From the IMG/VR virus record IMGVR_UViG_3300022752_000015, positions 124,001-188,000 of that record: a stretch of 64,000 bases of DNA; one strand, 5' to 3'. Of this stretch, positions 14,598-32,906 are shown piece after piece (positions within the stretch are counted from its first letter, which is position 1; the number at the start of each line of letters is the position of its first letter). The notes under the pieces are model-generated. The model was not told the origin of the DNA, made no database searches, and saw only the letters and a list, made by a program, of their open reading frames with translations. A program made the translations under genes and the position numbers.

Positions 14598-14883
14598 TGT
14601 TCGGTTGTAATTTTTCGTTTACTATGTTGTTAGCTACTAAAAGCATGGCATCGCGGGCGTTCTTTGCGCTTTGTACTAATTCGACAGCAATTGGATCATC
14701 AAATGCAACTGGTGTTTCTAACAACTTTGTCATTCTTCCATAAGAAAAATCAAGCACGTCTAAAGATTCTTCAATTCTTTCAGTCAAATCTTCAAACTGT
14801 TCTAACGTCTGCATGTGCCTCTTTACTAAGAGAAACAAACATGAAAATGTTAAAAGATTAGAAAATATCAAAAAATAAATCAT
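14590..14883 (-). CDS. Small membrane-anchored coiled-coil protein
   Basis: 97 aa; hydrophobic N-terminus MIYFLIFSNLLTFSCLFLLV followed by a heptad-like helix; overlaps both neighbours. Confidence 0.55.
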   Translation of the reverse strand: MIYFLIFSNLLTFSCLFLLVKRHMQTLEQFEDLTERIEESLDVLDFSYGRMTKLLETPVAFDDPIAVELVQSAKNARDAMLLVANNIVNEKLQPNNE

Positions 14884-16040
14884 TTTAAGAAATGTCCTAA
14901 TTGATCATCATAAATTTTCGCAACTTCTGAAAACCGATATTTCTCTTTAATCACATTAGCTCCTTCTAATGCCCATTCTTTAGGCAAAGTAGGAGATGAT
15001 CTAAACTTTGCAATTTTTTTCTTAAAATCTGACTCTAGGGGTTCAGCCCATTTAGCTCCTGCTACAAAGATCTTATCATCTATGCGCGACGGATGGACTG
15101 GGACGATCTTACTATCAATCTTAGTAAATTTGGTGTGCTTCAAAAAATCTAAGTGTCCTGACCAATTTGTAGCAATGACTGGTAATCCAGAAGCGGCGGC
15201 TTCTAAAATTGGTAATCCATATCCTTCTCCCCTAGTCAAAGTTACCAAAGCTTTAATTTTAGGATTCGTGTAAAGACCAGCTACATCTTTATTACTTAGT
15301 TCGCCATGCAAAAGATGTAATTTAGGATATGGACCTTTTCTAACTTCAGATAAAACATTTTTTAGAATCTTAATGATAAGATTTCTATCAATTTTAGTAT
15401 TTCTTCCTGAATTAGTCTTTAGAACTATTCCAACATCAGGATCATCCTTAAAAACTTCGCACAACCATTTAATGGTAAACAGAATATTCTTTCGATCATT
15501 GTGCGGGTTATTTCCTGTAAGTTGTCCGAACACTAAAAAATTAAATTTGGTGTCAACTTCTGGCAAATCTAAACTGTGATCATTACCTAATATTTCTTCG
15601 CAAAAAGATTCTGGTATTACGTGAACTGGTTTTATTACTTCGCCTATTGAAGTAATGCTTTCTTTTGCATGATTAGAAGGAAAAACAACTGCATCCATGC
15701 TGTTACAAGCGGTTACCCAAGACGTATGAGCCTTGTCTGTTTCTACTGATGCTGTCAAACCTACGTTTTTTGAAGATAATTTTGGATCCCATTCGTTAGG
15801 AAGCTGAAGTTGAAAAGAAACGTCTGCCTTGTAATCAGGACCAACCGTTCTTTCCATTATTTTTCCGACCAATCCATCATCAAAATCTTTATCTAAAATC
15901 CATGGAGTATCTCCCCAAGGAGTTGCCATAAATTTCACGGAAATATCAGGTTGATTAATTAACCACTTTGCTACCTGTCTACTATGAACTCCGTATCCAG
16001 ATTGCGTCATCACAGGACCCCTGAGAACTACAGTTTTCAT
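14880..16040 (-). CDS. Glycosyltransferase, GT4 family (GT-B)
   Basis: RGPVMTQSGYG...DRKN...GEGYGLPILEAAASGLPVIATNWSGHLDF (EX7E motif); start moved to ATG 16040 (ATGA overlap with upstream stop). Confidence 0.85.
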   Translation of the reverse strand: MKTVVLRGPVMTQSGYGVHSRQVAKWLINQPDISVKFMATPWGDTPWILDKDFDDGLVGKIMERTVGPDYKADVSFQLQLPNEWDPKLSSKNVGLTASVETDKAHTSWVTACNSMDAVVFPSNHAKESITSIGEVIKPVHVIPESFCEEILGNDHSLDLPEVDTKFNFLVFGQLTGNNPHNDRKNILFTIKWLCEVFKDDPDVGIVLKTNSGRNTKIDRNLIIKILKNVLSEVRKGPYPKLHLLHGELSNKDVAGLYTNPKIKALVTLTRGEGYGLPILEAAASGLPVIATNWSGHLDFLKHTKFTKIDSKIVPVHPSRIDDKIFVAGAKWAEPLESDFKKKIAKFRSSPTLPKEWALEGANVIKEKYRFSEVAKIYDDQLGHFLK

Positions 16041-17281
16041 AGAGAATTTACCTCCCAAGCTTTTCTTTGGTCTTTCCAAGTTTCAATCAGTTTCATCAAT
16101 GAAATATCCCAATCAGAAACAATCTTCTTTAGATCATAATCTTTGTGAGCGTGTTCTAATGCTCTCATTCCGACTTGCTTTCTCTTATCAGGACCCCATT
16201 CATACATTTCTAAAAATGCATTTGCTAATTTTTCATGAGTAACTAAATCTTCGTAAATGAAAGGTACCATTTGATTGCCAACCAAAGATTTAACGTCAGG
16301 TTCTAATGCAATCCCATATTGTTCACCAGTCTCTAGATCTTCAACTTGTCTAGTTAACCCGCCGGTTTTAATAGCAATAATGGGCTTTCCACACATCATA
16401 GCTTCTAAAGTGGGTAAACCAAATCCTTCATTAGAACTTCTATTAACGATTGTATCGCATGCCGAATAAACTTCTCTCATTTCATCGAAATCAACTCTCT
16501 TTTTAGAGAATTTTACATGATCTTCAATCTGAAGCATCTCTATGACATGATAAAGATTAGGACCTTCATGATCAAGAGGATCTGTATGCATCAAAAGCGT
16601 AGCTTTTTTATGACCATGCTTTTCTTGCAAAGCATCTAAAAATTGCTTCCAAGACACTAAAATATCACTTGGCATTTTTCTTCTAGCATTTCTAGAGACA
16701 TAAAGAGCCACAAAGTGATCTGCTCTATCGGAACCTAAAATCTTAACTTTATTTTTTCTAGAATTATCTTCAGATAAAGGATAATAGATTTCTTTTGGAA
16801 CTCCATGAGGAATATAGTTGGTTTTTTCTGGAAATCTTTCCTTAACCATTTGATAGGTGGGCCAATTTATACAATTGACTAAATCAGTAGATTCATATAG
16901 CACTTTATTGAATTCTGGCCAAGGACCGTTATCCCATAGATGATTGTATGCGATTGGACATATTTGATGTATTTCATCCTCCATTTCCCAAACCCAAATA
17001 AAAAATCTAGGATCGGTAAATAGCATTAGAGCGTCTGGTCGTTCAGTCGCAAGGACTTGTCGCAAAAGATTTCTGTCACCAAATCCGTTAGTCGGTTTGA
17101 TAATGAAATCTTCATTTACTACAATCGTTCTATAGTCTTCATGCTTCATTGCACCACCAAAGCACTTAAACTTATATTTCCCTGTAGAAATTAGTCCATT
17201 AATCAACCATCTAGCTTGAGTTCCTACTCCGCTCGTAGAAAGTGGGTGATCTGAAAGTAACAATATTGTCTTTTTCTGCAT
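16037..17281 (-). CDS. Glycosyltransferase, GT4 family (GT-B)
   Basis: LSDHPLSTSGVG...VSRNARRK...NEGFGLPTLEAMMCGKPIIA (EX7E motif). Confidence 0.85.
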   Translation of the reverse strand: MQKKTILLLSDHPLSTSGVGTQARWLINGLISTGKYKFKCFGGAMKHEDYRTIVVNEDFIIKPTNGFGDRNLLRQVLATERPDALMLFTDPRFFIWVWEMEDEIHQICPIAYNHLWDNGPWPEFNKVLYESTDLVNCINWPTYQMVKERFPEKTNYIPHGVPKEIYYPLSEDNSRKNKVKILGSDRADHFVALYVSRNARRKMPSDILVSWKQFLDALQEKHGHKKATLLMHTDPLDHEGPNLYHVIEMLQIEDHVKFSKKRVDFDEMREVYSACDTIVNRSSNEGFGLPTLEAMMCGKPIIAIKTGGLTRQVEDLETGEQYGIALEPDVKSLVGNQMVPFIYEDLVTHEKLANAFLEMYEWGPDKRKQVGMRALEHAHKDYDLKKIVSDWDISLMKLIETWKDQRKAWEVNSL

Positions 17282-17341
17282 CAACGATATATTACCTACT
17301 TTTCAAAAGTTGTAATAAAAATTCATCAAACTAACAAAAAA

Positions 17342-18160
17342 TTATGTGCAATGCTCAGTGCCTTTATACTCACAGTATGTGCATGCATCTCTATTTTTGA
17401 TGGCAATGCCTCGTTTGACGGAAGTCAACATGTTTCCAACAACCTTAAGAGATTTCTTAATTGGTACCTCACCAAGAGAAACAGAAAATAACTCGCAATG
17501 TTCTCCTGGTTTTGCTGACTTTTTCAAAAGCACAAAACCGCATCTAACATCCTTGAATGGAACATTAGGATTTTTTTGGCACCAATAGTTTTTGTAAAGA
17601 GCCAGCTGGGCTTTTACCATGTCGTCTGATCTTTTTTCTCGAAACCACCCTCTTATAGTAGTTTTCCAATCGAGAATCCAATAGACTGTTTCTCCTCTTT
17701 TACCCTTGGCTTTAATGACTCCATCAATAAAACCTTTGAATGCATGAGGATGACCTTCAACGGCTTCATAAAGTTGATGCTCTGCATCAACGACTTGCCA
17801 TTCAGGAAACTCTTTATCTAAAAATGCAGGAACCTCAGATAGAATTTGAGATACTTCAACCTTAGCTTTCTCTAAAGCAGATTTAGAAAAATCAGGATTG
17901 TCTTCATGCTTCTTCCAAGCATTGTCTAGATGACTAAACGCGACCTGCTGATCCATCTCTCGAGTCAACAGATATTTTTCGCAAGATGCATGGACAGCGG
18001 TTCCAAAGTCTAAAACAGGAGAAGGTTTAGACAAATCAATCTTTTTAATATGAATTAGATGATGTCTAAAAGAACATTCCTTCCATAACTTTACCTCAGA
18101 AAAAGAAACGTGCGGTTTTCCAGTAGGTAAAGTTTGGAAGGAACTATTATTTTCTTGCAT
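17342..18160 (-). CDS. Cas4/AddB-like PD-(D/E)XK nuclease with 4-Cys Fe-S motif
   Basis: HVSFSEV...C...FGTAVH...AEHQL...FKGFIDGV...ILDWKT...QLALY...CTYCEYKGTEHC. Confidence 0.8.
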   Translation of the reverse strand: MQENNSSFQTLPTGKPHVSFSEVKLWKECSFRHHLIHIKKIDLSKPSPVLDFGTAVHASCEKYLLTREMDQQVAFSHLDNAWKKHEDNPDFSKSALEKAKVEVSQILSEVPAFLDKEFPEWQVVDAEHQLYEAVEGHPHAFKGFIDGVIKAKGKRGETVYWILDWKTTIRGWFREKRSDDMVKAQLALYKNYWCQKNPNVPFKDVRCGFVLLKKSAKPGEHCELFSVSLGEVPIKKSLKVVGNMLTSVKRGIAIKNRDACTYCEYKGTEHCT

Positions 18161-18196
18161 TGTTATAAGGTAATTTACATTACCTTATTAGTTCAA
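18161..18196 (-). promoter_or_regulatory. Sigma70-like promoter, leaderless type, overlapped by a perfect 10-bp inverted repeat
   Basis: TTGAAC-N18-TACCTT-N6-ATG(18160); IR ataaggtaat-ttac-attaccttat at 18165-18188. Confidence 0.55.
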
Positions 18197-19125
18197 TCTT
18201 TGGGTTTTTTAGAAACTGCACGGCCAGACATGCGTTCCCAATCTCTGTCTTTTCTAACCTCAAGATTCTTTTCCCACGCAGCTTTAAGAACAGTCGGTTT
18301 AACCTCAAGATTTTTTGCAACGTCGATCATAGCATTGATGTCCTTAGGGAAACAGTGACCCCCGCTGCCAAAGTCACCATCAGGTCCAGGTACACTCCAG
18401 TGGCTTGATCCTAACCTAGAATCATACTTTGCATATTCAATTACCTTATCATAATCCACATTTAATCCGGATTTATCTAGGGCATTACAAACCTGATACA
18501 TCTCGTTTGCAAACGAAACCTTAACTGTCAGGAAGTTATTAGTGACATATTTCACCATCTCAGCTGTCGTTGACGAAGTTTTGATGAGTGGAACTTTTGG
18601 AAACGCTGTTTGAAAAACTTGTTTCACGGTATTAATCCACGGGCGAGGTCCACCAAGAATAATACGATTTTGATTTCTCATGTCATCTAGAGCGTTGGCC
18701 TCTGTGAGAAATTCTGGATTAAAAACTACATGAAGGCCTTGTTCCGAGAACATCTTGTTCCATCTCTCAGTAGAGCCAGGAGGAACCGTGGATTTTACTA
18801 CAGCAATTCTCTCGCCAGGTAAAGTTGCCAATTGCGAAAGAACACCTTCTACGATAGACAGATCCGCAGATCCGTCATCATACATCGGAGTCGGTAGACA
18901 CACAAAATACACTTTTGAGAAGTTTTCAGATGCTTCACATGACTTTACGAACTCATTTACATTAGTCGGGTGTAATCCTTCTGGTGTTGTTGGTTGCTTT
19001 CCTCCAGTACAGACTTTTCCTGTCTTGTCATGCACCAAGACGTCGAATCCTCTTTCAGCAAAGACAGTAGTAAGAGAGCCGCCAACAAACCCTTGACCTA
19101 CAACAGCAATAGATTGTTTCTTCAT
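18193..19125 (-). CDS. ugd: UDP-glucose/GDP-mannose 6-dehydrogenase family protein (short form)
   Basis: GQGFVG Rossmann motif, CLPTP, KSTVPPG, FNPEFL, AEMVKY, GGHCFPKD (catalytic Cys); only 310 aa. Confidence 0.9.
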   Translation of the reverse strand: MKKQSIAVVGQGFVGGSLTTVFAERGFDVLVHDKTGKVCTGGKQPTTPEGLHPTNVNEFVKSCEASENFSKVYFVCLPTPMYDDGSADLSIVEGVLSQLATLPGERIAVVKSTVPPGSTERWNKMFSEQGLHVVFNPEFLTEANALDDMRNQNRIILGGPRPWINTVKQVFQTAFPKVPLIKTSSTTAEMVKYVTNNFLTVKVSFANEMYQVCNALDKSGLNVDYDKVIEYAKYDSRLGSSHWSVPGPDGDFGSGGHCFPKDINAMIDVAKNLEVKPTVLKAAWEKNLEVRKDRDWERMSGRAVSKKPKD

Positions 19126-19160
19126 ACAAAGATTATAAGAAAAAATAAAAAAATGATCAA
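19126..19160 (-). promoter_or_regulatory. Sigma70-like promoter, leaderless type
   Basis: TTGATC-N17-TATAAT-N6-ATG(19125). Confidence 0.65.
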
Positions 19161-19162
19161 GA

Positions 19163-20068
19163 TTATTCTAACGCCTTAATAACAGTTTTCCATCCAACAT
19201 CATTCTTTATTACGTTCACTGATTCAATTATTTTGTCTTGAAGTTGATTCGCTTCTTTCAAGTTTCTTCTTATCACTTCAATTGCATTCTCAAATGAATC
19301 ATAAGTCATTATCGTAGAGATATTATTTTTAGGAACATAATTTTCTAATTCTTCTTCATAATCTCTAATGCTTATACAACCTCTAGCTGCGGCCTCAACA
19401 TCTTTAATCCACAGTGCATTTGCTGAGATGTTTTTTCCATTCACTTGCCAATTGACTTGCTCATTATGCACATAGATTTTTATATTTGACAAATTTTGCA
19501 AAAATTCTTGGTAAGGAGCAGGTTTCAGCACCTCGACAACAATTCCTTCACTTTTAAGATAATCAAAGAATTTTTTCCTATAAGGATGTAGTTGGCCACA
19601 AAAGCCTAAATCTATTTGTCGTGAAGATAATTCAGGAACAGCAGAACAATATTCTGGCAACATCCACATCTTCACAAATTTAGACCTTATTCCTTGAGAG
19701 TTGATAAAGTCGCTCCACCACTTCGACGTATTTAAGAAGGATAAAACATTCAACTCGTTATAAATCTTATGATATGAACCCTTGTATTGCGAATCATCTT
19801 TGAAAGATTCCCAAGGATCCTGTTCATAGATATAAATTTCTCTATTATCTAAAAACCTCTTAATTGTATGAACGTTGTTGTTTATTGTCCTAAGCTTTAA
19901 ACATGACAATATCCTATCATGGTTTGAAGATATTTTTTTATTCTTCAATATGTCATCAATTGTGCTAAAGGTCAATTCACACTCTTGACTTAAGGTTTTG
20001 AATAACTGATGTTGATAACAGTTAGACTGAATGTAAGACAAGTTGTCAATCAATACATGCAATTTCAT
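19163..20068 (-). CDS. Putative GT-B glycosyltransferase-like protein
   Basis: DLGFCGQLHPYRKKF...YQEFL...IYVHNE...KDVEAAARGC resembles CgeB/Glyco_trans_1_2-type C-termini; glyco-cluster context. Confidence 0.55.
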   Translation of the reverse strand: MKLHVLIDNLSYIQSNCYQHQLFKTLSQECELTFSTIDDILKNKKISSNHDRILSCLKLRTINNNVHTIKRFLDNREIYIYEQDPWESFKDDSQYKGSYHKIYNELNVLSFLNTSKWWSDFINSQGIRSKFVKMWMLPEYCSAVPELSSRQIDLGFCGQLHPYRKKFFDYLKSEGIVVEVLKPAPYQEFLQNLSNIKIYVHNEQVNWQVNGKNISANALWIKDVEAAARGCISIRDYEEELENYVPKNNISTIMTYDSFENAIEVIRRNLKEANQLQDKIIESVNVIKNDVGWKTVIKALE

Positions 20069-20769
20069 CTTTTTACTTTTTCTTTTGAGTAAGTTCTCTT
20101 AGCAATTTCAAAAGCATTTTGAAAATCTTCATCTCTATAATCAACATTTTCGTACGATAAAGACAACTTAAATCCCATTAGACACATGCCTCTGATTCTG
20201 TCAAAATCGTTTTTTTCCCAAGCAGAATAGACCTTATTAAGAATGTCTGATTGGTTCTTTTTACCTCTATGAAAGCCGTAATGAAATGCTTGAGATTCTG
20301 AAGAGTACCAGCAATGCTTCCCGGCAGGTATTAACTTTTCAGGTAATTGATTTCCGCGTAAAACGATATCATGACCCGTGTCTGCTCGATCAGGATACAA
20401 CTTATCAACTTTTGTTGCAACATTGACAGTGTTTTTTAAGCAAGTTAGTCCATATATCAAGCTGTCTGTCAAATAATCGTGTAACCAAGCTTGCGCACCT
20501 GTTACTCTAGAGTTACTTTCAAAAACTTCAACAAAGTTTTTTATAACTTCATTATGAGACAAGACAGTATCGGCATCAACCTTCAAGAAAAGTTGATGAT
20601 CTTTTTTAGCTTCATTCCACGCGGAAAATAATTTTTCATGAGCTTCTTTTTCTGGAAGATTAGAAACAACGTAATGTGTCAGTTCTACGCCTACTTGATT
20701 TTTTATTGATTCTTTACAAGTTTGAAAATCTAACTCTCCATGTTCCATGGTTCCAACAAAAATTTTCAT
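20065..20769 (-). CDS. Putative GT-A (GT2-like) glycosyltransferase
   Basis: FLKVDADTVL DxD motif after a hydrophobic strand; cluster context. Confidence 0.55.
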   Translation of the reverse strand: MKIFVGTMEHGELDFQTCKESIKNQVGVELTHYVVSNLPEKEAHEKLFSAWNEAKKDHQLFLKVDADTVLSHNEVIKNFVEVFESNSRVTGAQAWLHDYLTDSLIYGLTCLKNTVNVATKVDKLYPDRADTGHDIVLRGNQLPEKLIPAGKHCWYSSESQAFHYGFHRGKKNQSDILNKVYSAWEKNDFDRIRGMCLMGFKLSLSYENVDYRDEDFQNAFEIAKRTYSKEKVKR

Positions 20770-24275: not shown

Positions 24276-25099
24276 AGTTTAGTAACATCATTTAAAGAAA
24301 TTTCAGATATTGTATCAGATCTAGTAGGTCTATAATCAATTTCTAAATTGTAATTTCTGCTTCCGTTTACAACAACATTGACATTTTCATTTCCTAGCTT
24401 AGAATGAAATACTCCGCCATCTAAAAGTGCTGAAATCTTGTATCTATCGTAGTATAACTTTTGATAATCAGTTTCGCTAAATTTTTTTAAAGAAGAAAGA
24501 TCTAAAAAAACTTCTTTTATAGCTTGAATTCTACTTAAAGCTGGTAGTTTTGCTAAAAAATTGCATTTATAAATTCCTTCATAATTTGTCTTATGAAACT
24601 CTACTCTTTTGTTTTGAATAAAATTATTTTGAGTCACCCATGCATATTTCCTTGAATTTTTTTTTGGACTTCCTTTATCATAAAGATGTCTTTCTGCAAC
24701 AAAAAATTCTTCTGTTCTTACAAACCCTACATCATCATTAGAATCTAAAAATGACTCACACATCTCTAGCTTTTTTAAAGAATCATCAAAATGGATTAAA
24801 TCAGATTCAATTATGTAAAGATATTTGTAATCTCTACTCATTAACGTTTGATAATTTTTCAAACACCAATGTATTGCACTCCAAAGTCCTACGTTTAGTT
24901 TAGATTGATAAACATTATTAAAGTTGTCTGTCAGCAATTTTACGCTACCTGTATAAGAAGAAGCGTTGTCAAATACCAACATGTTATGTAACGTTTTTTT
25001 ATCAAATACATTACACAAATTATTAACAACTTGATTCAAAATTTCAAATCTTGTAATATCTTTCGTACAAGTAACCAAAAGAAATAAAGTATCTTTCAT
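24272..25099 (-). CDS. Putative GT2-like glycosyltransferase
   Basis: LVFDNAS...NVGL...YLYIIESD; start moved to ATG 25099 (ATGA overlap). Confidence 0.55.
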   Translation of the reverse strand: MKDTLFLLVTCTKDITRFEILNQVVNNLCNVFDKKTLHNMLVFDNASSYTGSVKLLTDNFNNVYQSKLNVGLWSAIHWCLKNYQTLMSRDYKYLYIIESDLIHFDDSLKKLEMCESFLDSNDDVGFVRTEEFFVAERHLYDKGSPKKNSRKYAWVTQNNFIQNKRVEFHKTNYEGIYKCNFLAKLPALSRIQAIKEVFLDLSSLKKFSETDYQKLYYDRYKISALLDGGVFHSKLGNENVNVVVNGSRNYNLEIDYRPTRSDTISEISLNDVTKL

Positions 25100-27164: not shown

Positions 27165-28067
27165 TCAAATAATGGATATTAAATTTCTATATCCTTGATA
27201 TCCTTGTGGTAATTTCCAGGATTCAACGTTGGGGATTGAAGGAATAGCTAAGCTAACATCGTCTTGAATAGAATGAAGAGGAAGAACTTGAGTAGCTATT
27301 CCTATGTTTCTTGAAACTACTGGAACATTTAATAATCCACATTCTATCAAAGATTGAGGACCTCCTTCACACCTTGCTGTCACAGGATATAAATCAAGAG
27401 TTTGATATAACTCGTTTATTACATCGTGAGGTGGTCGTTCGACATATGTGAATGGTATTCCAGATTTTTTTAGTCTAGAGATTATATACTGTCTTCTCCA
27501 TCCAGCCAAAACAACATGCAAGTCAGGATTCTTTTTAACGACTTTTTCTAGATAATCGGCCAGCAAATCTGGACCTTTTTCTAATTTAGGACTTATCAAA
27601 TCAGATCCTTCTGTGTCTCTTTGAAAAGATCCTATCAAGTATGAATTCAACGGCAAATTATATTTTTTTCTTAAATCGTTTTTACTTCCAGTTGCTTTCC
27701 ATATCTTTTGATTTGCCCAATATGGTACCACGAATACTTCTTTTTTTGTTAATCTACTTATAAAGTCTTTAGTCTGTTCATTGTAAACGTGATACGCTGT
27801 CGTTAACTTATCTCTAAACATAAATTCTTGATAAGCTAAAGAATTAAATTTTTCAGGAACAATGTGGTGAACGGTGGTCAAAACTTTTTTCCCGTTTAAC
27901 CAACCTGATTGATACAGATTTTGCCAAGCCCAATCAGCTAATAACCAAACTACATTTGCGTCTTTTGGGTGATTAACACTTATGTCTGAATTATCTTCAT
28001 TCCATTCTTTGACAAATCTATCGACTATCCAATCCTCAGATGGAGGTAAGACAAACACCTTATTCAT
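27165..28067 (-). CDS. Glycosyltransferase, GT4-like
   Basis: GSFQRD...EKGPDLL...YPVTARCEGGPQSLIECGLLNVPVVS; start moved to ATG 28067 (ATGA overlap). Confidence 0.8.
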   Translation of the reverse strand: MNKVFVLPPSEDWIVDRFVKEWNEDNSDISVNHPKDANVVWLLADWAWQNLYQSGWLNGKKVLTTVHHIVPEKFNSLAYQEFMFRDKLTTAYHVYNEQTKDFISRLTKKEVFVVPYWANQKIWKATGSKNDLRKKYNLPLNSYLIGSFQRDTEGSDLISPKLEKGPDLLADYLEKVVKKNPDLHVVLAGWRRQYIISRLKKSGIPFTYVERPPHDVINELYQTLDLYPVTARCEGGPQSLIECGLLNVPVVSRNIGIATQVLPLHSIQDDVSLAIPSIPNVESWKLPQGYQGYRNLISII

Positions 28068-28963
28068 TGAAAAATTATATTCCAAAAATGTTTCATTGAA
28101 TCGGACCATCTTAAAATATCATAAGAATTATTCTTCAAATCTCTGCTAAGCAACAACTTTTCAATTTCAAAAAAATTCTTATAGACATGATCTATGCCTG
28201 CGAATTCTACAGATCCGCCACCTTCAACATGAACGTATGTTGGCAAACCTACAGCAATAGATTCTAAAACATGATTAGGTCCTGGGTCATGTCTTGATCC
28301 ACTTATATAAACATCATGTTTTGCTAACTCTTTTGCTAACTCTTCTCCGTGAATTGGAGGAATTATTTTTGTATTGTTAAAGGTACCTCTTTCTCTTCCG
28401 ATGTAAGTAAATTCAATATTTCTTTCTTTCGTGGTCAAATAATCAATAAACTCGTATACGTCAAATCCCTTTAAAGAATTGTTAGACCAATGATGAGTTA
28501 CTACTTTGAGTTTATTATCTGAACGAGTATATGAGTTGTTCTTTCTATTTTCAATGAAAGTGTCATCTACTCCGTTGTGCACAACGTATTGTTTCTTACA
28601 ATTCCACCCTTTTTTATTGAAGTAATCTTTCATCCAGTTACTAACAAAAATTGTTTTTGTATTTAAGATGCTACATTGTAAGAGCAAACTATCCATGTGT
28701 TCAGTACCTTTTCTAGCATCACATTCATTGATTCTTTGAACAACTGGAATTTTTTTAACAGAAGACACAAATTTGTAGACGTCATTTGCGTCAAACATTC
28801 CATTTTCTTTTCTAGGATCCATTAGAAATATGGAATCAACATCTTCTGACAGATTATTAGTAATGGTTATGCCAGAAGGAACAGTTGCATATACTGCTCT
28901 AACAAAATTGTTTCCGCCGCCCCAAGGTCCGTCTATTGGCTTTCTATTTATGGCTATTTTCAT
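28064..28963 (-). CDS. Glycosyltransferase, GT4-like
   Basis: GPWGGGNNF...FVSNW...VVHNGVD...KGFD...DPGPNHVLESIAVGLP. Confidence 0.8.
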   Translation of the reverse strand: MKIAINRKPIDGPWGGGNNFVRAVYATVPSGITITNNLSEDVDSIFLMDPRKENGMFDANDVYKFVSSVKKIPVVQRINECDARKGTEHMDSLLLQCSILNTKTIFVSNWMKDYFNKKGWNCKKQYVVHNGVDDTFIENRKNNSYTRSDNKLKVVTHHWSNNSLKGFDVYEFIDYLTTKERNIEFTYIGRERGTFNNTKIIPPIHGEELAKELAKHDVYISGSRHDPGPNHVLESIAVGLPTYVHVEGGGSVEFAGIDHVYKNFFEIEKLLLSRDLKNNSYDILRWSDSMKHFWNIIFQ

Positions 28964-29889
28964 AATAGTTCTTTAAAAAATGTTAGATAATCATTCATGA
29001 CTCTATTCATTGAGACGTCTGTGTCAGGCTTTTTGTCTTTTAGGTCTGGAAGTTTTTCTTTTATTTGGCTCACGTCTATTTTTGGAGGATTATCATAGTT
29101 GACTAGTTCGTAATCATATGGTTGATTCTCTTTTAAAATCACTCCAAAATTCTTAACTAGTTCTTTTGTGCCTCCTTGCTCCGAACAAATAACAGGAGTA
29201 AATTGAGATAAAGATTCTACCACCGTATTAGGACAATGATCTAACCAAGCAAGGTGAATCATCCAATTTGAAGCAGAGAATACTTCTAGACAAACTTCAT
29301 GAGGTTGAGGTCCTGTGTAGAATATGTCTACATCAGGAATCATTTTTGGATTTGAACCCATCACTATGAGCGCGGCTGAACTATAAAAACTTTGTAAATG
29401 CTTGAATAACTCAACGTTAGATTCAAGCCTTTTTTGTGAGTGCCAATTTGCTGAACAGACAAAAAGCATTTCATACTTTTGTCTAATTTGTTCTAATGAA
29501 GAAATTTTAAACTGTTTAACGGGTTCAGCATTTATGCCATTCAATATGATCTTTCCATTTTTTGGAATTCCCCACCATTTCGACGCCATATTCTTATCAA
29601 ATTCAGATTGCCAGATCACGCCATCAGCTTTTTGATATAATGATTTTATATTGAAGTTTTTTACGTGAAATTCAGATGGAGAAAACCAAATTCCATCAAG
29701 TCTTTGAACGACTTTCTTTGCCAAGGGTCTACCGCTAGGTTCAATAAAAACCAAAGAAACATCTGAATTTCTTCCATCATAAATTTCTACCTCATGCCCA
29801 GATTCTATAAGACCTTTTGCAAATCTCTTTGCAAAAGAATTTGGACCTGAATTAGATCCCATATTCACATTGTCTAAATGTATTTTCAC
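28960..29889 (-). CDS. Glycosyltransferase, GT4-like
   Basis: SGPNSF...VQRLDG...WQSEF...ILNGI...KRL...DHCPNTVVESLSQFTPVICSEQGGTKELV. Confidence 0.8.
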   Translation of the reverse strand: MKIHLDNVNMGSNSGPNSFAKRFAKGLIESGHEVEIYDGRNSDVSLVFIEPSGRPLAKKVVQRLDGIWFSPSEFHVKNFNIKSLYQKADGVIWQSEFDKNMASKWWGIPKNGKIILNGINAEPVKQFKISSLEQIRQKYEMLFVCSANWHSQKRLESNVELFKHLQSFYSSAALIVMGSNPKMIPDVDIFYTGPQPHEVCLEVFSASNWMIHLAWLDHCPNTVVESLSQFTPVICSEQGGTKELVKNFGVILKENQPYDYELVNYDNPPKIDVSQIKEKLPDLKDKKPDTDVSMNRVMNDYLTFFKELL

Positions 29890-30248
29890 GATCTTCGTTT
29901 TACCTCTGAAATAAAAGGTGTGGCAAATTCAGTACCATTTAGCATAACGGCCATTAAAGCAATTTCTTTAGTTTCAATATTTTTTAAACTAGCTCTTTGC
30001 GTAAAGATGTTGGGATCTAATTCTTGGGTCTCGTTTATGTTTATAGAATCATAGTACATTTGAGCTAGAAAATTAACTGATTCATTTGATAGAGGGGTTG
30101 CAGCCGTTTTTATCACTTCAGACAATGTAAAAAATACATCGTTATAAATCTCTATGCAAGTTGCTTTATTTAAAATTTGATTCTTTCTTTTTGAAAGTCT
30201 TTCCACTAACAGCTTAGTAATAGAATCATGAAAATTTTGCTTTTTCAT
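29886..30248 (-). CDS. Hypothetical protein within the glycosylation island
   Basis: 120 aa, ATGA-coupled to GT genes on both sides; no motif recognised. Confidence 0.55.
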   Translation of the reverse strand: MKKQNFHDSITKLLVERLSKRKNQILNKATCIEIYNDVFFTLSEVIKTAATPLSNESVNFLAQMYYDSININETQELDPNIFTQRASLKNIETKEIALMAVMLNGTEFATPFISEVKRRS

Positions 30249-30979
30249 TTTACAAACCCACGTTTTCTTAAAAATACAGCTTCATCTCTTTGAAATTTAG
30301 CGTCATCTGTTTGATACGTCTCAGGAACATCTTTAATGGTATAATGATACATTATACGAGGCAAAAATAGCCTTTTTTTAGACTTATGAAGAACTGGTAA
30401 GTAAATCGCTTGATCTCCTGCTCTTCTTATATAGTTGCCGTCCTCTCCTCTAAAGTTTTCATCTTTTACTTCATTTATTAAAATTTTTCTAAACGTTTTT
30501 AGATGACTTGAAACCCAAGGATAAGCGTAAACATCTGCGTCGTTAGGCATAGTGTTGCTAATATTTTTATCAGAAAAACTCCATCGATGAGCTGTCCAAA
30601 GAGCTTCGCAACCTGTTTCAACATACGCATGGTTAATGATAGATAACGCATCAAGATCTGTCAACCAATCATCTGCATCTATTCTACAAACAATATCATT
30701 GTCATCGCACTTAGATATTCCTGTTAATACATTAGCTACTTCCCATTTTTTTTCAACATTCCATACAAAATCAATTTTTTTCTTGTAAGCTTGATCTAAC
30801 ATGTTAGAAAAATCATTTTCTATTTTTTTACATTTTCTAACATGTTCGTCTGAAGATACGTCATCGATCAAAATTACTCGCCAATTTTCATATGATTGAC
30901 CACAAATAGAATGAAGCATCCGAGGCAAGGTCTCGGATGCGTTATACATTGGAGCAACAAAAACGAATCTATTTTGCAT
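30245..30979 (-). CDS. Glycosyltransferase, GT2 family
   Basis: FVAPMYNAS...SICGQSYENW...LIDDVSSD...RIDADDWL...AGDQAIY. Confidence 0.85.
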   Translation of the reverse strand: MQNRFVFVAPMYNASETLPRMLHSICGQSYENWRVILIDDVSSDEHVRKCKKIENDFSNMLDQAYKKKIDFVWNVEKKWEVANVLTGISKCDDNDIVCRIDADDWLTDLDALSIINHAYVETGCEALWTAHRWSFSDKNISNTMPNDADVYAYPWVSSHLKTFRKILINEVKDENFRGEDGNYIRRAGDQAIYLPVLHKSKKRLFLPRIMYHYTIKDVPETYQTDDAKFQRDEAVFLRKRGFVK

Positions 30980-30983
30980 TAGA

Positions 30984-32906
30984 TTATAACATAATTTTGG
31001 GCTGAGATTTGTTCACAACAATATGATAAGTTTTTGTCTTACCATCCCATTTTTTATGCCAAATCCAACCGCCTAAACTTTCCGAAAGTTCAGTAGCTTT
31101 AGAAGCTATCATTTCATCTGTTACTTGCGACCAAGGGACATCAAACATCATATTTGATTCTGCTGTGTCTTCATAAGATTTTCCTGACAAAGATTCCCAA
31201 TGTTTGGTCCAATATTTTTTGTAAAGCTTAATCTTTCTATTCAAATCAAACCAACTATAATGAAACACACCAGGTAAATTATCAACGACTTTATTGAACC
31301 ACTCTTGATAATTTTTTATTGCGTCAGGATCTCCTAAAACAGCTTTATTACGAACATCATCAACTTCAGAAGTGTAAAAAGTTACGTGAGGTATTCTTTC
31401 GTAAGATGATGAATCTATCATGTCACATCCATCTCCATAAGCCGCATAAAGATTTCCATTTTCATCAGTTCGACGAGCATCTAAAGGTATTCCGTGAGTG
31501 ATATTTTTCTTATTTTTACTTAATCTCCACTTCCAAGGAAGAACATCGGCTCTAACTTTCTCAGGGCCTCCCCAATATTCAACAACTGGCAATGATATAA
31601 TATCTACGCTAGTTGGGAACTTAGCACATAAATTTAATATTTTTTCACAATCTTCTTCATGCACTATTTCGTCTGAATCCATTTGCCAACAAAAATCTCC
31701 TGTGCACATGGATCTTGCTTCGGCTTTTTGCATTCCGTCAAAAACAGCAAATCTAGGATGACTCCAATCTCTTATCACTTGTTTCAGTTTGATCTTTGTT
31801 TCAGTAGATGACAATTCTTGAAGCTTCTCCCAAGTGCCGTCTGTAGAACCTCCATCAACAATACAAACCTCCTCACAAAAAGGAAGCATAGACTTAACAC
31901 ACTGTATAAATGGATATTCTTGAGACAATGCATTATAAACCGTCACATATCCGCTGATATTAGGACGATATTCCATCATCTTTTTTATGTAATTCCAAAA
32001 TAGAGTTGGCGCTCCAAATAAGTACTCTTCAATCTCTTCAACGTTATTTGTAGAGAACCAATCTTCATTTTTATGTTGTACGTTTTCATTCAAATGAAGT
32101 TTGCATCCCAGAAGCTTCGCTTCTATGACCATTCTTGGGCAGGTATCAGCGCCTGCTGGAAGATATACAAAACCTTCTGCATTAGCTAACTTTTCCAACA
32201 TGACTTCGTAAGCTACATTCCAGACAACTTCATATTCTACTTTGTTGTCTAAGCACCACTTTTCTGCAGCTTGAGCTCCTTTTACCCATGATTCTGATCC
32301 TAAGACTATCCACCTTTTTCGATCTGATGTTGATAAAGAAACAGCTTCTCTGAGCCACTTGATGGTACCTAGAGTTTTTTTCGAAAATACGCTTGATAAG
32401 ACAACATTATCTTTTTCAGATAAAAATGGGAACATTCTATGATAACGATCTTTTTGCGCCTCTGACATCCACCATAGAACTTTTGCTCCATAATAAAAAG
32501 CAGAAATTAATTTTCCATTGAATTGGTTGTGACAATCACATGGAGATCCGGTTTTCTCAGAATGTTTTTCAGGAGATCTGTACTTGCAATATTTGTAATC
32601 ATATTCTAAAATAGAATAATTCAAATTTCCAATTATGCTTGGAACTAGTTCCATGTTCATTTGAGCAAAATTGCCAAAGATCCAAAACTTATTGGTTCCT
32701 TGAGCTAACAAATGCATAGTCAGCTCTTTTGAACGAATTTTCATGTAAGGCAAAGGACATTCATCAATCAAAGCCTGCGTGGTTAGTTCTGCTCCGCCGA
32801 CATAATCTTCTGAAAAAAGATCAGCTACAAAAATAACCTTAACTTCATCAGGGATGATGAGAGGTCTAGAACTATTTTCGAATACGCTTTTATTGAATGT
32901 TTGCAA
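30984..32906 (-). CDS. Two-domain glycosyltransferase (GT-B + GT2 fusion)
   Basis: N-part GGAELT...KGA...DTCPRMVIEAKLLGCKL (GT-B); C-part ISGYVTVYNA...CIVDGGSTDGT...WQMDSDEIV (GT2); TTG start with GAGG upstream. Confidence 0.8.
   Translation of the reverse strand: MQTFNKSVFENSSRPLIIPDEVKVIFVADLFSEDYVGGAELTTQALIDECPLPYMKIRSKELTMHLLAQGTNKFWIFGNFAQMNMELVPSIIGNLNYSILEYDYKYCKYRSPEKHSEKTGSPCDCHNQFNGKLISAFYYGAKVLWWMSEAQKDRYHRMFPFLSEKDNVVLSSVFSKKTLGTIKWLREAVSLSTSDRKRWIVLGSESWVKGAQAAEKWCLDNKVEYEVVWNVAYEVMLEKLANAEGFVYLPAGADTCPRMVIEAKLLGCKLHLNENVQHKNEDWFSTNNVEEIEEYLFGAPTLFWNYIKKMMEYRPNISGYVTVYNALSQEYPFIQCVKSMLPFCEEVCIVDGGSTDGTWEKLQELSSTETKIKLKQVIRDWSHPRFAVFDGMQKAEARSMCTGDFCWQMDSDEIVHEEDCEKILNLCAKFPTSVDIISLPVVEYWGGPEKVRADVLPWKWRLSKNKKNITHGIPLDARRTDENGNLYAAYGDGCDMIDSSSYERIPHVTFYTSEVDDVRNKAVLGDPDAIKNYQEWFNKVVDNLPGVFHYSWFDLNRKIKLYKKYWTKHWESLSGKSYEDTAESNMMFDVPWSQVTDEMIASKATELSESLGGWIWHKKWDGKTKTYHIVVNKSQPKIML

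What the first reader, a model, noticed from the sequence alone, without database searches (positions are those of the whole stretch)
14880..32906. ~18-kb phage-encoded glycosylation island next to the baseplate operon: candidate virion glycosylation system
Seen: 18 co-oriented, mostly overlapping genes. About 13 carry GT-A or GT-B motifs (one is a GT-B+GT2 fusion), alongside Ugd, a 4,6-dehydratase, a DegT aminotransferase and a GNAT. I see no flippase (Wzx), polymerase (Wzy), initiating phospho-GT, ABC exporter or obvious multi-pass membrane protein. Known: bacterial LPS/capsule loci need such membrane machinery, whereas virion glycosylation (Mimiviridae fibrils, some mycobacteriophages) uses soluble GTs. 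Inference: this phage builds a complex glycan in the cytoplasm on its own proteins, or less likely on DNA, for shielding or receptor interaction. The island is co-oriented with, and directly upstream of, the late sigma and baseplate genes.
Basis: partly seen in the sequence, partly recalled or inferred. Interest (0 to 1): 0.85.

Follow-up and report, generated by a model that had tools for sequence, protein, structure and literature searches.

The report
Variable sugar-building island in lake jumbo phage
A giant freshwater phage carries an 18-kb block of soluble sugar-making and sugar-attaching enzymes, with conserved end genes and a strain-variable middle; similar blocks are known in other large aquatic phages, and what the sugars are attached to is still unproven.

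Summary
Eighteen co-oriented, tightly packed minus-strand ORFs (14880-32906) encode a PseB/PseC/PseH-like amino-sugar pathway and a short Ugd-like dehydrogenase. Seven glycosyltransferases pass Pfam thresholds, one more is supported by structure, and five are weaker leads. No ORF has a membrane-spanning segment.

New here: about 130 IMG/VR loci of related phages show the island has conserved anchors, g1 at one end and g15-g18 at the other, around swappable cargo. The g1-to-g17 distance ranges from 7.9 to 27 kb. Only 1 of 1130 ORFs on the island side of relatives has two hydrophobic segments, and none has more.

The g16-g17-g18 triad also occurs in cultured Flavobacterium phage immuto. Published LC-MS of that phage's DNA shows no sugar-nucleosides.

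The acceptor is unproven. Phage-autonomous cytoplasmic glycosylation of phage (virion) proteins is my best reading (about 0.4). Remodelling of the host envelope (about 0.25) and DNA glycosylation (about 0.1) remain open. The 'late operon' argument is weakened, because conserved sigma-70-like promoters precede g16 and g17, and g17-g18 look co-transcribed with the late-sigma gene.

Comparable GT-rich clusters are known in cyanophages and pelagimyophages, and core GTs were reported for 'moraphages'. I file this as a new member of a known kind, made testable by a cultured relative.

The parts
30984..32906 (-). g1, 640 aa. Left anchor of the island. Conserved N-terminal domain of unknown function (residues 1-310, Cys107/123/125, GGAE and DTCPR-VIEAK motifs) plus a GT2 domain.
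   Evidence: Pfam GT2 at 322-443. More than 2300 homologue clusters of about 640 aa, N-terminus 60-92% identical. Present in 42 of 43 related loci. AF2 pLDDT 86; Foldseek best hits are SunS/ThuS peptide S-glycosyltransferases, RmlT, TarS and GalNAc-T4. The N-terminal domain has no PDB or profile match. In other proteins it is fused to GT4, GT2, methyltransferase or Prim-Pol domains.
30245..30979 (-). g2, GT2 glycosyltransferase, semi-core
   Evidence: Pfam PF00535, E 5e-16. Homologue in 33 of 43 loci.
29886..30248 (-). g3, 120 aa, unknown, semi-core
   Evidence: No Pfam, NCBIfam or PDB match. Homologue in 31 of 43 loci.
28960..29889 (-). g4, GT-B (GT1/GT4) glycosyltransferase, semi-core
   Evidence: Pfam PF00534, 29.4 bits, above cut-off. 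In 26 of 43 loci.
28064..28963 (-). g5, probable divergent GT-B (sub-threshold)
   Evidence: Pfam GT4/GT1 below cut-off. Aligns only at the E-x7-E region of g17, not significantly. In 19 of 43 loci.
27165..28109 (-). g6, GT1 glycosyltransferase
   Evidence: Pfam PF00534, 33.8 bits. In 15 of 43 loci.
26229..27143 (-). g7, GT2 glycosyltransferase, variable cargo
   Evidence: Pfam PF00535, 34.6 bits. Patchy in relatives.
25096..26232 (-). g8, likely viral GT-B glycosyltransferase (lead), variable cargo
   Evidence: No Pfam hit. Atlas feature score 0.98 to viral clusters that partly carry Glycos_transf_1.
24272..25135 (-). g9, GT-A-fold protein (lead), variable cargo
   Evidence: Atlas model TM 0.59-0.63 to GT2 clusters. 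82% identical in the near-identical strain.
23213..24238 (-). g10, UDP-GlcNAc 4,6-dehydratase of the PseB/FnlA/CapD type
   Evidence: PF02719, E 2e-82. TIGR03589 PseB 276 bits (cut-off 408) and FnlA 221 bits.
22066..23235 (-). g11, PLP sugar aminotransferase (DegT/PseC-like)
   Evidence: PF01041, E 3e-81. TIGR03588 PseC 232 bits (cut-off 423).
20766..22076 (-). g12, fusion of a novel GT-A domain with a DxD motif (1-270) and a PseH-like GNAT N-acetyltransferase (274-427)
   Evidence: GNAT Pfam and PseH 65.8 bits. The N-terminal family has no Pfam model and invariant D92/D94. AF2 pLDDT 94; Foldseek hits WrtF, B3GNT2, Mimivirus R699 and GT8. The N-terminal domain is absent in the near-identical strain.
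20065..20769 (-). g13, GT-A-like protein (lead; WfgQ-like)
   Evidence: No Pfam hit. Atlas score 0.99 to unnamed clusters whose models resemble WfgQ and GT2. In 17 loci.
19163..20068 (-). g14, 301 aa, unknown (weak GT-like hit only)
   Evidence: PF13524, 17 bits, below cut-off. No PDB hit. In 16 loci.
18193..19125 (-). g15, short nucleotide-sugar 6-dehydrogenase-like protein. Has the catalytic Cys motif but no C-terminal UDP-binding domain. Part of the right anchor.
   Evidence: PF03721 and PF00984. TIGR03026 205.8 bits, covering profile positions 2-295 of 413. GGHCFPKD motif. In 50 loci at 40-89% identity and the same length.
17342..18160 (-). g16, PD-(D/E)XK nuclease, always next to g17-g18
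   Evidence: PF12705, E 2.5e-17. In 72 of 78 loci. Homologue in the same position in phages immuto and Mel-JY01.
16037..17284 (-). g17, core GT4 glycosyltransferase
   Evidence: PF00534, E 2.5e-16. 210 IMG/VR matches at 53-87% identity. Profile hits to BshA-type GT4s and chlorovirus B736L. 32% identical to immuto gp181.
14880..16079 (-). g18, core GT4 glycosyltransferase
   Evidence: PF00534, 35 bits; PF20706 GT4-conflict, 28.5 bits. In 76 of 78 loci. 32% identical to immuto gp180.
14590..14883 (-). g19, 97-aa protein with one N-terminal membrane anchor. Overlaps g18 and the sigma gene.
   Evidence: Hydropathy 2.24 at residues 1-22. In 56 loci.
13812..14597 (-). g20, late-sigma (gp55-like) factor gene, probably co-transcribed with g17-g19
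   Evidence: PHROG 234, E 1e-5. Gene overlaps. Conserved order in relatives.
18167..18196 (-). Sigma-70-like promoter upstream of g16 (TTGAAC, 18 nt, TACCTT), ending 6 nt before the ATG
   Evidence: TGAAC occurs in 23 of 24 distinct upstream regions of relatives. The full pattern occurs in 16 of 24, against about 0 in shuffles.
17289..17315 (-). Sigma-70-like promoter upstream of g17 (TTACAA, 15 nt, TAATAT)
   Evidence: Conserved TTACA...TAATAT/TACGAT in relatives. 7 of 26 match a strict pattern, against 0.1 in shuffles.
24246..24275 (-). Sigma-70-like promoter upstream of g10 (TTGAAC, 18 nt, TATAAT)
   Evidence: Conserved in the near-identical strain.
19132..19160 (-). Sigma-70-like promoter upstream of g15 (TTGATC, 17 nt, TATAAT)
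   Evidence: Seen in the window only, so weak.

Best explanation
The island is a phage-autonomous, purely cytoplasmic glycan-assembly system that belongs to the core genome of a widespread clade of freshwater jumbo myoviruses, probably the 'moraphage' lineage.

Sugar supply. g10, g11 and the g12 GNAT would convert UDP-GlcNAc into a UDP-2,4-diacetamido-2,4,6-trideoxyhexose. The pathway stops there, because no PseG, PseI or PseF is present. This is inferred from family-level homology. g15 may add a uronic-acid-type sugar, but that is uncertain.

Assembly. Eight to thirteen soluble GT-A and GT-B transferases assemble an oligo- or polysaccharide. The conserved transferases (g1, g2, g4, g17, g18) would lay a conserved inner structure. 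The swappable middle genes (g7-g14) would add strain-specific outer sugars.

Acceptor. The most likely acceptor is one or more phage-encoded (virion) proteins, as in chloroviruses, Mimiviridae and mycobacteriophages. The enzymes would be made before the late genes, so that structural proteins are decorated as they appear.

Status of each step. Shown: gene content, absence of membrane components, the anchor/cargo architecture, and mosaic exchange between strains. Inferred: sugar identity, order of action, timing, and the acceptor.
For: 1. All 18 proteins are soluble. In about 893 kb of island-side sequence from relatives, only 1 of 1130 ORFs has 2 hydrophobic segments and none has more. Cellular loci around PseB-like genes show 9-12-TM proteins with the same scan.
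2. g1, g17 and g18 are conserved about as well as the helicase: g1 60-94%, g17 53-87%, helicase 51-78% in non-identical relatives. They stay linked even when rearranged, as in L148 with g16-g17-g18-g1. This is core-gene behaviour, unlike sporadic host-modifying accessory genes.
3. The triad occurs in phages of very different hosts (Flavobacterium, Microcystis, and g17 alone in Rhodothermus). That argues for a phage-encoded or universal acceptor.
4. Cargo varies. The g1-to-g17 distance is 7.9-27 kb. Relatives carry Gmd/Fcl, Rml-type, ADP-heptose-type, GT9, GT11, GT6 and sulfotransferase genes. Two near-identical strains differ mainly in the cargo and in a fibre-like protein.
5. DNA of the cultured relative immuto has no sugar-nucleosides (PMC10516641). 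No methyltransferase, TET or hydroxymethylase family is found in the window.
6. The g1 GT2 domain is structurally closest to the peptide glycosyltransferases SunS and ThuS. g12N resembles Mimivirus R699, and g17 resembles chlorovirus B736L. These are leads only.
7. Precedents: jumbo phage XacN1 has phage-encoded GTs and at least 2 virion glycoproteins (PMC5852040). Mycobacteriophage capsids are glycosylated (PMC12363180).
Against: - There is no direct evidence that any virion protein is glycosylated. No mucin-like Ser/Thr-rich region was seen in the large structural-region proteins.
- The enzyme repertoire (Pse-type, Rml, Gmd/Fcl, heptose, GT9, GT11) is exactly that of O-antigen loci. O-antigen transferases are soluble anyway.
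- Conserved sigma-70-like promoters and the position of the triad among replication genes in immuto, Mel-JY01 and RM378 fit early or middle functions.
- Co-variation of the cargo with a fibre-like protein fits masking of the host receptor equally well.
- Published interpretations of analogous clusters favour host-surface modification (PMC7824862, PMC7029224).
- immuto is only about 32% identical in g17 and g18 and lacks g1.
Confidence: 0.4

Rival explanations
1. Host-envelope remodelling. The phage transferases act at the inner face of the membrane on host undecaprenyl-phosphate-linked or lipid A-core intermediates. The host's own initiating transferase, flippase and ligase export the altered glycan. 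This changes O-antigen, capsule or surface glycoproteins so as to block superinfection or stop progeny sticking to infected cells.
For: - The repertoire is O-antigen-like: PseBCH-like genes here, and Gmd/Fcl, Rml, an ADP-heptose module, GT9 heptosyltransferase and GT11 fucosyltransferase in relatives.
- Hypervariability and mosaic exchange resemble cellular O-antigen loci.
- The cargo co-varies with a fibre-like protein.
- Sigma-70-like promoters suggest expression before the late genes.
- This is the published reading for cyanophage and pelagimyophage clusters (PMC7824862 section 3.4.10; PMC7029224).
Against: - No Wzx, Wzy, phosphoglycosyl transferase, ligase or ABC-type membrane protein was found among 1130 ORFs of about 100 relatives.
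- The core transferases are as conserved as replication genes and are shared by phages of unrelated hosts, which is unexpected for host-specific surface chemistry.
- The sugar genes have no close cellular counterparts.
Confidence: 0.25
2. DNA hypermodification. Some of the transferases, above all the conserved g17-g18 pair next to the PD-(D/E)XK nuclease, attach sugars to a modified base in phage DNA. This would protect the DNA from restriction and from the phage's own nuclease.
For: - The nuclease-GT-GT adjacency is conserved.
- The triad sits among replication genes in cultured relatives.
- The promoters are of early or middle type.
- Phage transferases related to LPS enzymes put mono- to trisaccharides, including heptose, on 5hmC (10.1101/2023.12.21.572611).
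- The moraphage paper lists this as a possibility.
Against: - No C5-methyltransferase, TET/5mYOX, thymidylate-synthase-like hydroxymethylase or DpdA family is found in the 64-kb window. The other roughly 150 kb of the genome was not examined.
- immuto DNA contains dA, dC, dT and fdPreQ1 only.
- Thirteen transferases plus a diacetamido-sugar pathway far exceed known DNA glycans.
Confidence: 0.1
3. Another soluble acceptor. The conserved GT4 pair makes a small glycoside such as a thiol- or solute-like compound, or glycosylates host proteins to take over the cell. The variable genes would serve a separate purpose.
For: - The nearest solved relatives of g17 by profile are BshA, MshA, sucrose-phosphate-synthase-like enzymes and TreT, which use small acceptors.
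- g18 passes the Pfam 'GT4 in conflict systems' threshold.
Against: - The similarity lies mainly in the generic nucleotide-binding half of GT4 enzymes.
- There are no PADLOC matches.
- Stable linkage with g1 and with the sugar cargo suggests one pathway.
Confidence: 0.1

Closest known systems
LPS-like / glycosyltransferase clusters of large aquatic myoviruses (cyanomyophages such as P-SSM2, S-SCSM1, S-SCSM2R; the pelagimyophage 'host recognition cluster')
   Same: Many paralogous transferases plus NDP-sugar enzymes (dehydratases, epimerases, PfkB kinase, cupin, nucleotidyltransferases). The clusters vary between related phages, lie near tail or baseplate genes, and have no proven function (PMC7824862, PMC7029224, PMC12801897).
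   Different: A different phage lineage. Here conserved anchor genes (g1; g15-g18) bracket the variable part. A PseBCH-like diacetamido-sugar module is present. About 13 GT-fold proteins sit in one 18-kb block, whereas 13 was reported as a genome-wide maximum for S-SCSM2R. A clade-wide lack of membrane machinery is documented.
'Moraphages' (Perez-Hernandez et al. 2025, PMC12619734)
   Same: Freshwater jumbo phages of 200-307 kb with a sigma factor, chaperones, PhoH, a UvsW-like helicase and T4-like baseplate genes. Four core glycosyltransferase orthogroups of unknown role are reported, and variable genomic islands are noted but not analysed. The window's source contigs are 212.8 and 278 kb and come from lake water.
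   Different: Sequence-level membership could not be checked, because their genomes are not in the tools. The paper does not describe this island, its anchors, its cargo or its lack of membrane proteins.
Virus-encoded glycosylation of virions in chloroviruses and Mimiviridae
   Same: Soluble virus-encoded transferases together with virus-encoded nucleotide-sugar pathways, and glycans that vary between strains. By my own knowledge this includes a UDP-GlcNAc 4,6-dehydratase/aminotransferase/acetyltransferase route in Mimivirus, clade-specific clusters, a conserved core with variable decoration in chlorovirus glycans, and early expression of the transferases. There are structural hits to chlorovirus B736L and Mimivirus R699.
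   Different: Those are eukaryotic viruses with experimentally solved glycans and known acceptor proteins. Here nothing is shown at the protein level.
Mycobacteriophage virion glycosylation (Che8, Corndog, Myrna; Freeman et al. 2023, as summarised in PMC12363180 and PMC12619734)
   Same: Phage-encoded soluble transferases glycosylate capsid and tail-tube subunits in the cytoplasm.
   Different: Those phages have only a few transferases and no sugar-nucleotide pathway or variable island. They are siphoviruses and myoviruses of Actinobacteria. No sequence relationship was tested, and the primary paper is not held.
[quoted passage not shown]
   Same: The order is PD-(D/E)XK nuclease, then GT (32% identical to g17), then GT (32% identical to g18). 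This is followed by a GT2, WecE-type aminotransferases, a methyltransferase, an acetyltransferase, an epimerase and further GTs. GroES/GroEL genes are nearby.
   Different: The genome is 160 kb. It has no g1 homologue. The cluster lies next to replication and lysis genes, not the baseplate. The DNA carries fdPreQ1. The cluster's function is unstudied.
Bacterial pseudaminic-acid / flagellin glycosylation islands and O-antigen loci
   Same: PseB-, PseC- and PseH-like enzymes, and GT2/GT4 transferases.
   Different: No PseG, PseI, PseF or Maf. No Wzx, Wzy, phosphoglycosyl transferase or ABC transporter. Scores fall below the equivalog cut-offs.

Membership tests
Wzx/Wzy- or ABC-dependent O-antigen/capsule locus | Initiating phosphoglycosyl transferase (WbaP/WecA type, membrane protein) | tested here: not met
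   No Bac_transf or Glycos_transf_4 hit and no TM segment in any of the 18 ORFs. None among 1130 ORFs of relatives.
Wzx/Wzy- or ABC-dependent O-antigen/capsule locus | Flippase and polymerase, or an ABC exporter | tested here: not met
   No multi-pass protein was found. The positive control detects 9-12-TM ORFs in cellular loci.
Wzx/Wzy- or ABC-dependent O-antigen/capsule locus | NDP-sugar synthesis genes plus several glycosyltransferases | tested here: met
Pseudaminic acid (Pse) pathway | PseB, PseC and PseH equivalogs | tested here: inconclusive
   These are the best NCBIfam hits, but all fall below the equivalog cut-offs: 276 vs 408, 232 vs 423 and 66 vs 93 bits. FnlA and LegC score nearly as well.
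Pseudaminic acid (Pse) pathway | PseG hydrolase, PseI synthase, PseF CMP-transferase | tested here: not met
   No NCBIfam or Pfam hit in the island. The g12 N-terminus is a DxD GT-A fold, not the GT-B fold of PseG. The rest of the genome was not examined.
Phage DNA-glycosylation gene clusters (T4-type or MT/5mYOX-dependent) | Enzyme creating the acceptor base (dCMP/dUMP hydroxymethylase, or C5-methyltransferase plus TET-like dioxygenase) | tested here: not met
   No such Pfam family is found in any ORF of at least 100 aa in the 64-kb window (PHROGs). About 150 kb of the genome lies outside the window and is untested.
Phage DNA-glycosylation gene clusters (T4-type or MT/5mYOX-dependent) | Sugar-bearing nucleosides in virion DNA | not testable with these tools
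   Indirect only. The cultured relative immuto shows dA, dC, dT and fdPreQ1 by LC-UV-MS/MS (PMC10516641).
Virus-encoded virion glycosylation systems (chlorovirus, Mimiviridae, mycobacteriophage) | Soluble virus-encoded glycosyltransferases, with or without virus-encoded sugar-nucleotide enzymes | tested here: met
Virus-encoded virion glycosylation systems (chlorovirus, Mimiviridae, mycobacteriophage) | Glycan covalently attached to capsid, tail or fibre proteins | not testable with these tools
   This needs purified virions. No sequence proxy was found.
GT-rich hypervariable clusters of large aquatic myoviruses | Multiple GTs plus sugar enzymes, variable among related phages, near tail or baseplate genes | tested here: met
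Moraphage lineage | Jumbo genome from an aquatic sample with sigma factor, chaperone, PhoH, T4-like baseplate and core GTs | tested here: met
   Contigs of 212.8 and 278 kb. Lake metagenomes. PHROG hits. Core GTs.
Moraphage lineage | Sequence or phylogenetic placement with the 25 published genomes | not testable with these tools
   Their genomes and supplements are not held.

The most novel reading that the evidence does not exclude
A whole clade of freshwater jumbo phages runs its own essential cytoplasmic protein-glycosylation system. Conserved core transferases, including the uncharacterised g1 N-terminal domain, build a conserved inner glycan on virion proteins. A recombining cassette region supplies strain-specific outer sugars. 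This would be a bacterial-virus counterpart of chlorovirus and mimivirus glycosylation, with virion 'serotypes' that diversify like O-antigens.
Probability: 0.35. Interest if true: 0.85.

Novelty: new member of a known kind. Interest (0 to 1): 0.55.

Why it matters
GT-rich 'LPS-like' clusters are among the commonest unexplained features of large aquatic phages. They have been read, without experiments, as host-surface modifiers.

This island adds three things. The system never carries membrane export machinery in about 100 relatives. Part of it (g1, g15-g18) behaves as an essential core gene set, while the middle is swapped between near-identical strains. And the core triad exists in a cultured, tractable phage-host pair (Flavobacterium phage immuto) whose DNA is already known not to be glycosylated.

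Together these make the question 'what do these phage sugar islands decorate?' directly testable. If the acceptor is the virion, phage particles in lakes would carry variable glycan coats, with consequences for adsorption, grazing, decay and host range.

The analysis also turned up two widespread enzyme domains with no family model (g1N and g12N) and a short Ugd-like dehydrogenase.

Tried and rejected
- Megablast of the island against GenBank phages found no match.
- PDB sequence searches of g8, g9, g13, g12N, g1N, g3 and g14 found nothing significant.
- hhalign of g1 against the g17 profile, and of single g5, g14 and g8 against the g17 profile, gave no significant match. The GT-B nature of g1N, g14 and g8 therefore stays unverified.
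- PseG as the identity of g12N is rejected. The domain is a DxD GT-A fold.
- A T4-type late promoter (TATAAATA) occurs once in 64 kb and not in the island. The TTGAAC-N16-19-TANNAT pattern is not enriched in the window alone (3 found, 1.7 expected). The promoter argument therefore rests on conservation in relatives.
- The generic sigma-70 scan is not above shuffles (69 found, 77.5 expected).
- The search for Ser/Thr-rich, mucin-like segments in structural-region proteins found none.
- The two 'RNA-Seq' runs holding the sequence are flagged as probably DNA and give only low-depth fragments, so they say nothing about expression.
- The genome-contig scan with g10 finds only close matches by design. 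Its hits of at most 40% are weak evidence.
- PADLOC gave no hits for g1, g3 or g14-g19.
- The moraphage paper's supplements and the Freeman 2023 paper are not held.
- Walking the remaining roughly 150 kb of the genome to look for base-modification genes was judged too costly in look-ups and was not done.

Full report
WHAT IS THERE

The finding's coordinates hold 18 ORFs, all on the minus strand, read from 32906 down to 14880. I number them g1 (30984-32906) to g18 (14880-16079). Twelve of the 17 junctions overlap and the rest are at most 57 bp apart.

Pfam and NCBIfam give:
- GT2 domains in g1 (residues 322-443), g2 and g7.
- GT1/GT4 domains in g4, g6, g17 and g18.
- Sub-threshold GT-B signals in g5 and g14.
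- A PseB/FnlA-type UDP-GlcNAc 4,6-dehydratase (g10, E 2e-82).
- A DegT/PseC-type aminotransferase (g11, E 3e-81).
- A PseH-like GNAT at the C-terminus of g12.
- A nucleotide-sugar dehydrogenase (g15).

g15 is only 310 aa. It keeps the catalytic GGHCFPKD motif but lacks the C-terminal UDP-binding domain, and this short length is conserved in relatives.

None of the 18 proteins has a hydrophobic 19-mer above the usual threshold. The only anchor-like segment nearby is in the 97-aa g19 (14590-14883).

Downstream on the same strand lie a gp55-like late sigma gene (13812-14597) and gp6-like and gp25-like baseplate wedge genes. Upstream and divergent lie a GroEL-like gene, the prohead protease, a helicase and PhoH.

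THE UNANNOTATED PROTEINS

The protein atlas places g8 with viral GT-B clusters (score 0.98). It gives g9 a GT-A fold (TM about 0.6 to GT2 models) and places g13 with WfgQ-like GT-A-like proteins. I treat these as leads.

The N-terminal 270 residues of g12 belong to a family of mostly stand-alone proteins of about 267 aa with no Pfam model, sometimes fused to a methyltransferase. The family has an invariant D-x-D. The AF2 model is confident (pLDDT 94). Foldseek places it among GT-A transferases: WrtF fucosyltransferase, B3GNT2, Mimivirus R699 and GT8. So g12 is a GT-A plus acetyltransferase fusion, not PseG-PseH.

The GT2 half of g1 is structurally closest to the peptide S-glycosyltransferases SunS and ThuS, then to K4CP, RmlT, TarS and GalNAc-T4. 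The N-terminal 310 residues of g1 form a very conserved alpha/beta domain with three invariant cysteines and GT4-like GGAE and VIEAK-LG motifs. It has no PDB sequence relative and no profile similarity to g17. The domain occurs in 978 representative clusters, alone or fused to GT4, GT2, methyltransferase or even Prim-Pol domains.

WHERE IT COMES FROM

The window is positions 124001-188000 of a 212.8-kb JGI lake-metagenome contig. The same genes occur on a 194-kb ENA contig and, at about 96% nucleotide identity, on a 278-kb IMG/VR contig. The sequence is present in at least 18 lake or aquatic metagenome runs from 2017-2025.

GenBank phages have no DNA match. The helicase is about 31-33% identical to those of huge metagenomic phages and phage G.

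The features fit the recently named 'moraphages': freshwater, 200-307 kb, sigma factor, chaperones, and four core glycosyltransferase orthogroups of unknown role (PMC12619734). Membership could not be tested at sequence level.

COMPARATIVE ANATOMY (THE MAIN NEW RESULT)

I used the 521-aa baseplate-side protein, g17 and g1 as queries and fetched about 130 related IMG/VR loci.

The right anchor is the block g16-g17-g18-g19-sigma-g21-g22-baseplate, which is nearly universal. Of 78 g17 loci, g18 is in 76, g16 in 72, and g15 in 50.

The left anchor is g1, found in 42 of 43 loci next to the divergent GroEL-like/protease/helicase block. It is followed, less constantly, by g2 (33 loci), g3 (31), g4 (26), g5 (19) and g6 (15).

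g7-g14, including the PseBCH-like module, are patchy.

The distance from the g1 start to the g17 start ranges from 7.9 to 27 kb in 12 contigs. In one distant relative, g1 directly follows g16-g17-g18.

Relatives carry other sugar genes in the same place:
- Gmd, a fucose-synthase-like epimerase, further 4,6-dehydratases, a PfkB kinase, a cupin and a B12-radical-SAM enzyme.
- In a 37-ORF survey: nucleotidyltransferases, RmlD-like reductases, DegT, GT2, GT6, GT9, GT11, a hexapeptide acetyltransferase, a HAD phosphatase, a sulfotransferase and methyltransferases.
- Some carry NAD-salvage genes between g15 and g16.

The window and the 278-kb strain are 96-100% identical over most of 40 kb. They drop to 71-93% in four blocks: g7-g12 (with the g12 GT-A domain missing in the other strain), the g2/g1 junction, the GroEL-like region, and the C-terminal two thirds of an 836-aa fibre-like protein (9343-11853). 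The other strain has an extra 2.5-kb cassette with a sugar nucleotidyltransferase at the g2/g1 junction.

Across about 893 kb of island-side sequence from relatives, only 1 of 1130 ORFs has two hydrophobic segments and none has more. The same scan finds 9-12-TM proteins next to PseB-like genes in cellular genomes.

NOT A RECENT HOST CAPTURE

Island genes are shared in order among phages at 50-85% identity. The 120 best homologues of g10 (63-94%) are all unnamed metagenomic proteins. A scan of 185,579 species-representative genomes found nothing above 40%, although that scan is designed to find close relatives only.

TIMING

g17, g18, g19 and the sigma gene overlap one another, so they are probably one transcript. 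That transcript must be made before sigma-dependent late transcription.

In relatives, a sigma-70-like promoter lies directly upstream of g16. TGAAC is present in 23 of 24 distinct upstream regions, and the full -35/-10 pattern in 16 of 24, against about 0 in shuffles. A TTACA...TAATAT element lies upstream of g17.

Similar elements precede g10, g15 and the primase-like gene in the window, but the pattern is not enriched in the window alone. The T4 late consensus is absent from the island.

By my own recollection of the chlorovirus literature, early expression of the transferases is also the rule there, so early timing does not exclude virion glycosylation.

CULTURED RELATIVES

[quoted passage not shown] These are followed by a GT2, aminotransferases, a methyltransferase, an acetyltransferase, an epimerase and more GTs. 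The triad also occurs in Microcystis phage Mel-JY01. A g17 homologue alone is in Rhodothermus phage RM378. In all three it sits among replication genes.

immuto's DNA has been analysed by LC-UV-MS/MS. It contains dA, dC, dT and fdPreQ1 in place of dG, and no sugar-nucleoside is reported (PMC10516641). This is the best available evidence against DNA glycosylation by the triad. The caveats are that identity is about 32% and that immuto lacks g1.

The window itself has no C5-methyltransferase, TET or thymidylate-synthase-like family. The other roughly 150 kb of the genome was not examined.

INTERPRETATION

Shown: the sugar-enzyme content, the complete and clade-wide absence of membrane machinery, the anchor/cargo architecture, core-gene-level conservation of g1, g17 and g18, and mosaic exchange of the cargo.

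Inferred: the product (a glycan containing a 2,4-diacetamido-2,4,6-trideoxyhexose and perhaps a uronic acid), pre-late expression, and the acceptor.

- Phage (virion) protein glycosylation, about 0.4. The conserved transferases behave like essential phage genes and are shared by phages of unrelated hosts. DNA glycosylation is disfavoured. There are precedents: XacN1 glycoproteins (PMC5852040), mycobacteriophages, chloroviruses and Mimiviridae.
- Host-envelope remodelling through host lipid-carrier machinery, about 0.25. The enzyme repertoire is O-antigen-like, such transferases are soluble anyway, and the literature on analogous cyanophage and pelagimyophage clusters reads them this way.
- DNA hypermodification, about 0.1.
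- A small-molecule or host-protein acceptor for the GT4 pair, about 0.1.

NOVELTY AND SCORE

GT-rich variable clusters in large aquatic myoviruses are known, and core GTs were reported for the probable lineage. I therefore file this as a new member of a known kind whose function is unknown for the whole kind.

The added value is the architecture, the clade-wide negative for membrane proteins, the two unmodelled domains, and a cultured handle for experiments. Interest 0.55.

Noticed in passing
window 9343-11853 (-): An 836-aa protein between the baseplate genes. Its N-terminal 147 aa are 100% identical in the near-identical 278-kb strain, but its C-terminal roughly 600 aa are only 71% identical. 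That pattern is typical of a receptor-binding fibre. It is one of four divergence hot spots between the two strains, and two of the others lie inside the sugar island.
   Followed up: partly
window 18193-19125 (-); relatives such as L013:521-1471: The nucleotide-sugar dehydrogenase is a conserved short form of 310-316 aa. It has the catalytic Cys motif but no C-terminal nucleotide-sugar-binding domain. Its substrate and activity are unclear.
   Followed up: partly
window 31977-32906 (-) (g1 residues 1-310): This is a widespread domain with no family model: 978 representative clusters, 212 of them at E<=1e-30. It has invariant Cys residues and GT4-like motifs. It occurs alone or fused to GT4, GT2 or methyltransferase domains, and in two cases to Prim-Pol domains.
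   Followed up: partly
window 21267-22076 (-) (g12 residues 1-270): A GT-A family with a DxD motif and no Pfam model. It is usually a stand-alone protein of about 267 aa, and is fused to Methyltransf_24 in some metagenomic proteins. It is present in this strain but absent in the 96%-identical one.
   Followed up: yes
window 14590-14883 (-): A 97-aa protein with a single N-terminal membrane anchor is wedged between the core GT4 pair and the sigma gene, overlapping both. It is conserved in 56 related loci. It could tether something to the membrane, but its role is unknown.
   Followed up: no
window 18167-18196, 17289-17315, 24246-24275, 19132-19160, 56766-56795: The promoter-like elements are classical -35/-10 (TTGAAC ... 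TATAAT-like) and end only 6-8 nt before the start codon, so the mRNAs would be nearly leaderless. By my own knowledge this is not the Bacteroidota consensus (TTTG / TAnnTTTG). That sits oddly with the Bacteroidota host predicted for moraphages. One g1 homologue sits on a 213-kb contig binned as Caulobacteraceae.
   Followed up: partly
window 58754-61891 (+): A 1045-aa ORF combines an Mre11-like metallophosphoesterase N-terminus with a Rad50/SbcC-like Walker B C-terminus. It looks like a fused gp46/gp47-type recombination nuclease.
   Followed up: no
window 55413-55805 (+): A 130-aa TnsA-like / endonuclease I-like nuclease, possibly a homing or Holliday-junction endonuclease.
   Followed up: no
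window 33645-34874 (+): The 'GroEL-like' protein is only 409 aa. It matches a PHROG chaperonin family (E 1e-20) but no Pfam model. It is one of the least conserved genes among relatives, at 24-45% identity.
   Followed up: no
L013:1583-4097, L018:30-1328: Some relatives carry NAD+ salvage genes (NAMPT, and an NMNAT-Nudix fusion) inserted between the g15 and g16 homologues, inside the sugar island.
   Followed up: no
window 41516-55400 (+) and 1883-6942 (-): A run of large ORFs (327-1326 aa) has no Pfam or PHROG match at all. They are presumably structural proteins of a lineage with no characterised members.
   Followed up: no
window 14880-32906: Several ORF-finder starts (TTG or GTG for g1, g4, g8, g9, g11, g17, g18) differ from the public gene calls, for example g9 at 275-284 aa, g11 at 381 aa and g18 at 386 aa. 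Some of the larger apparent overlaps (40-46 bp) are therefore probably artefacts of taking the most upstream start.
   Followed up: partly
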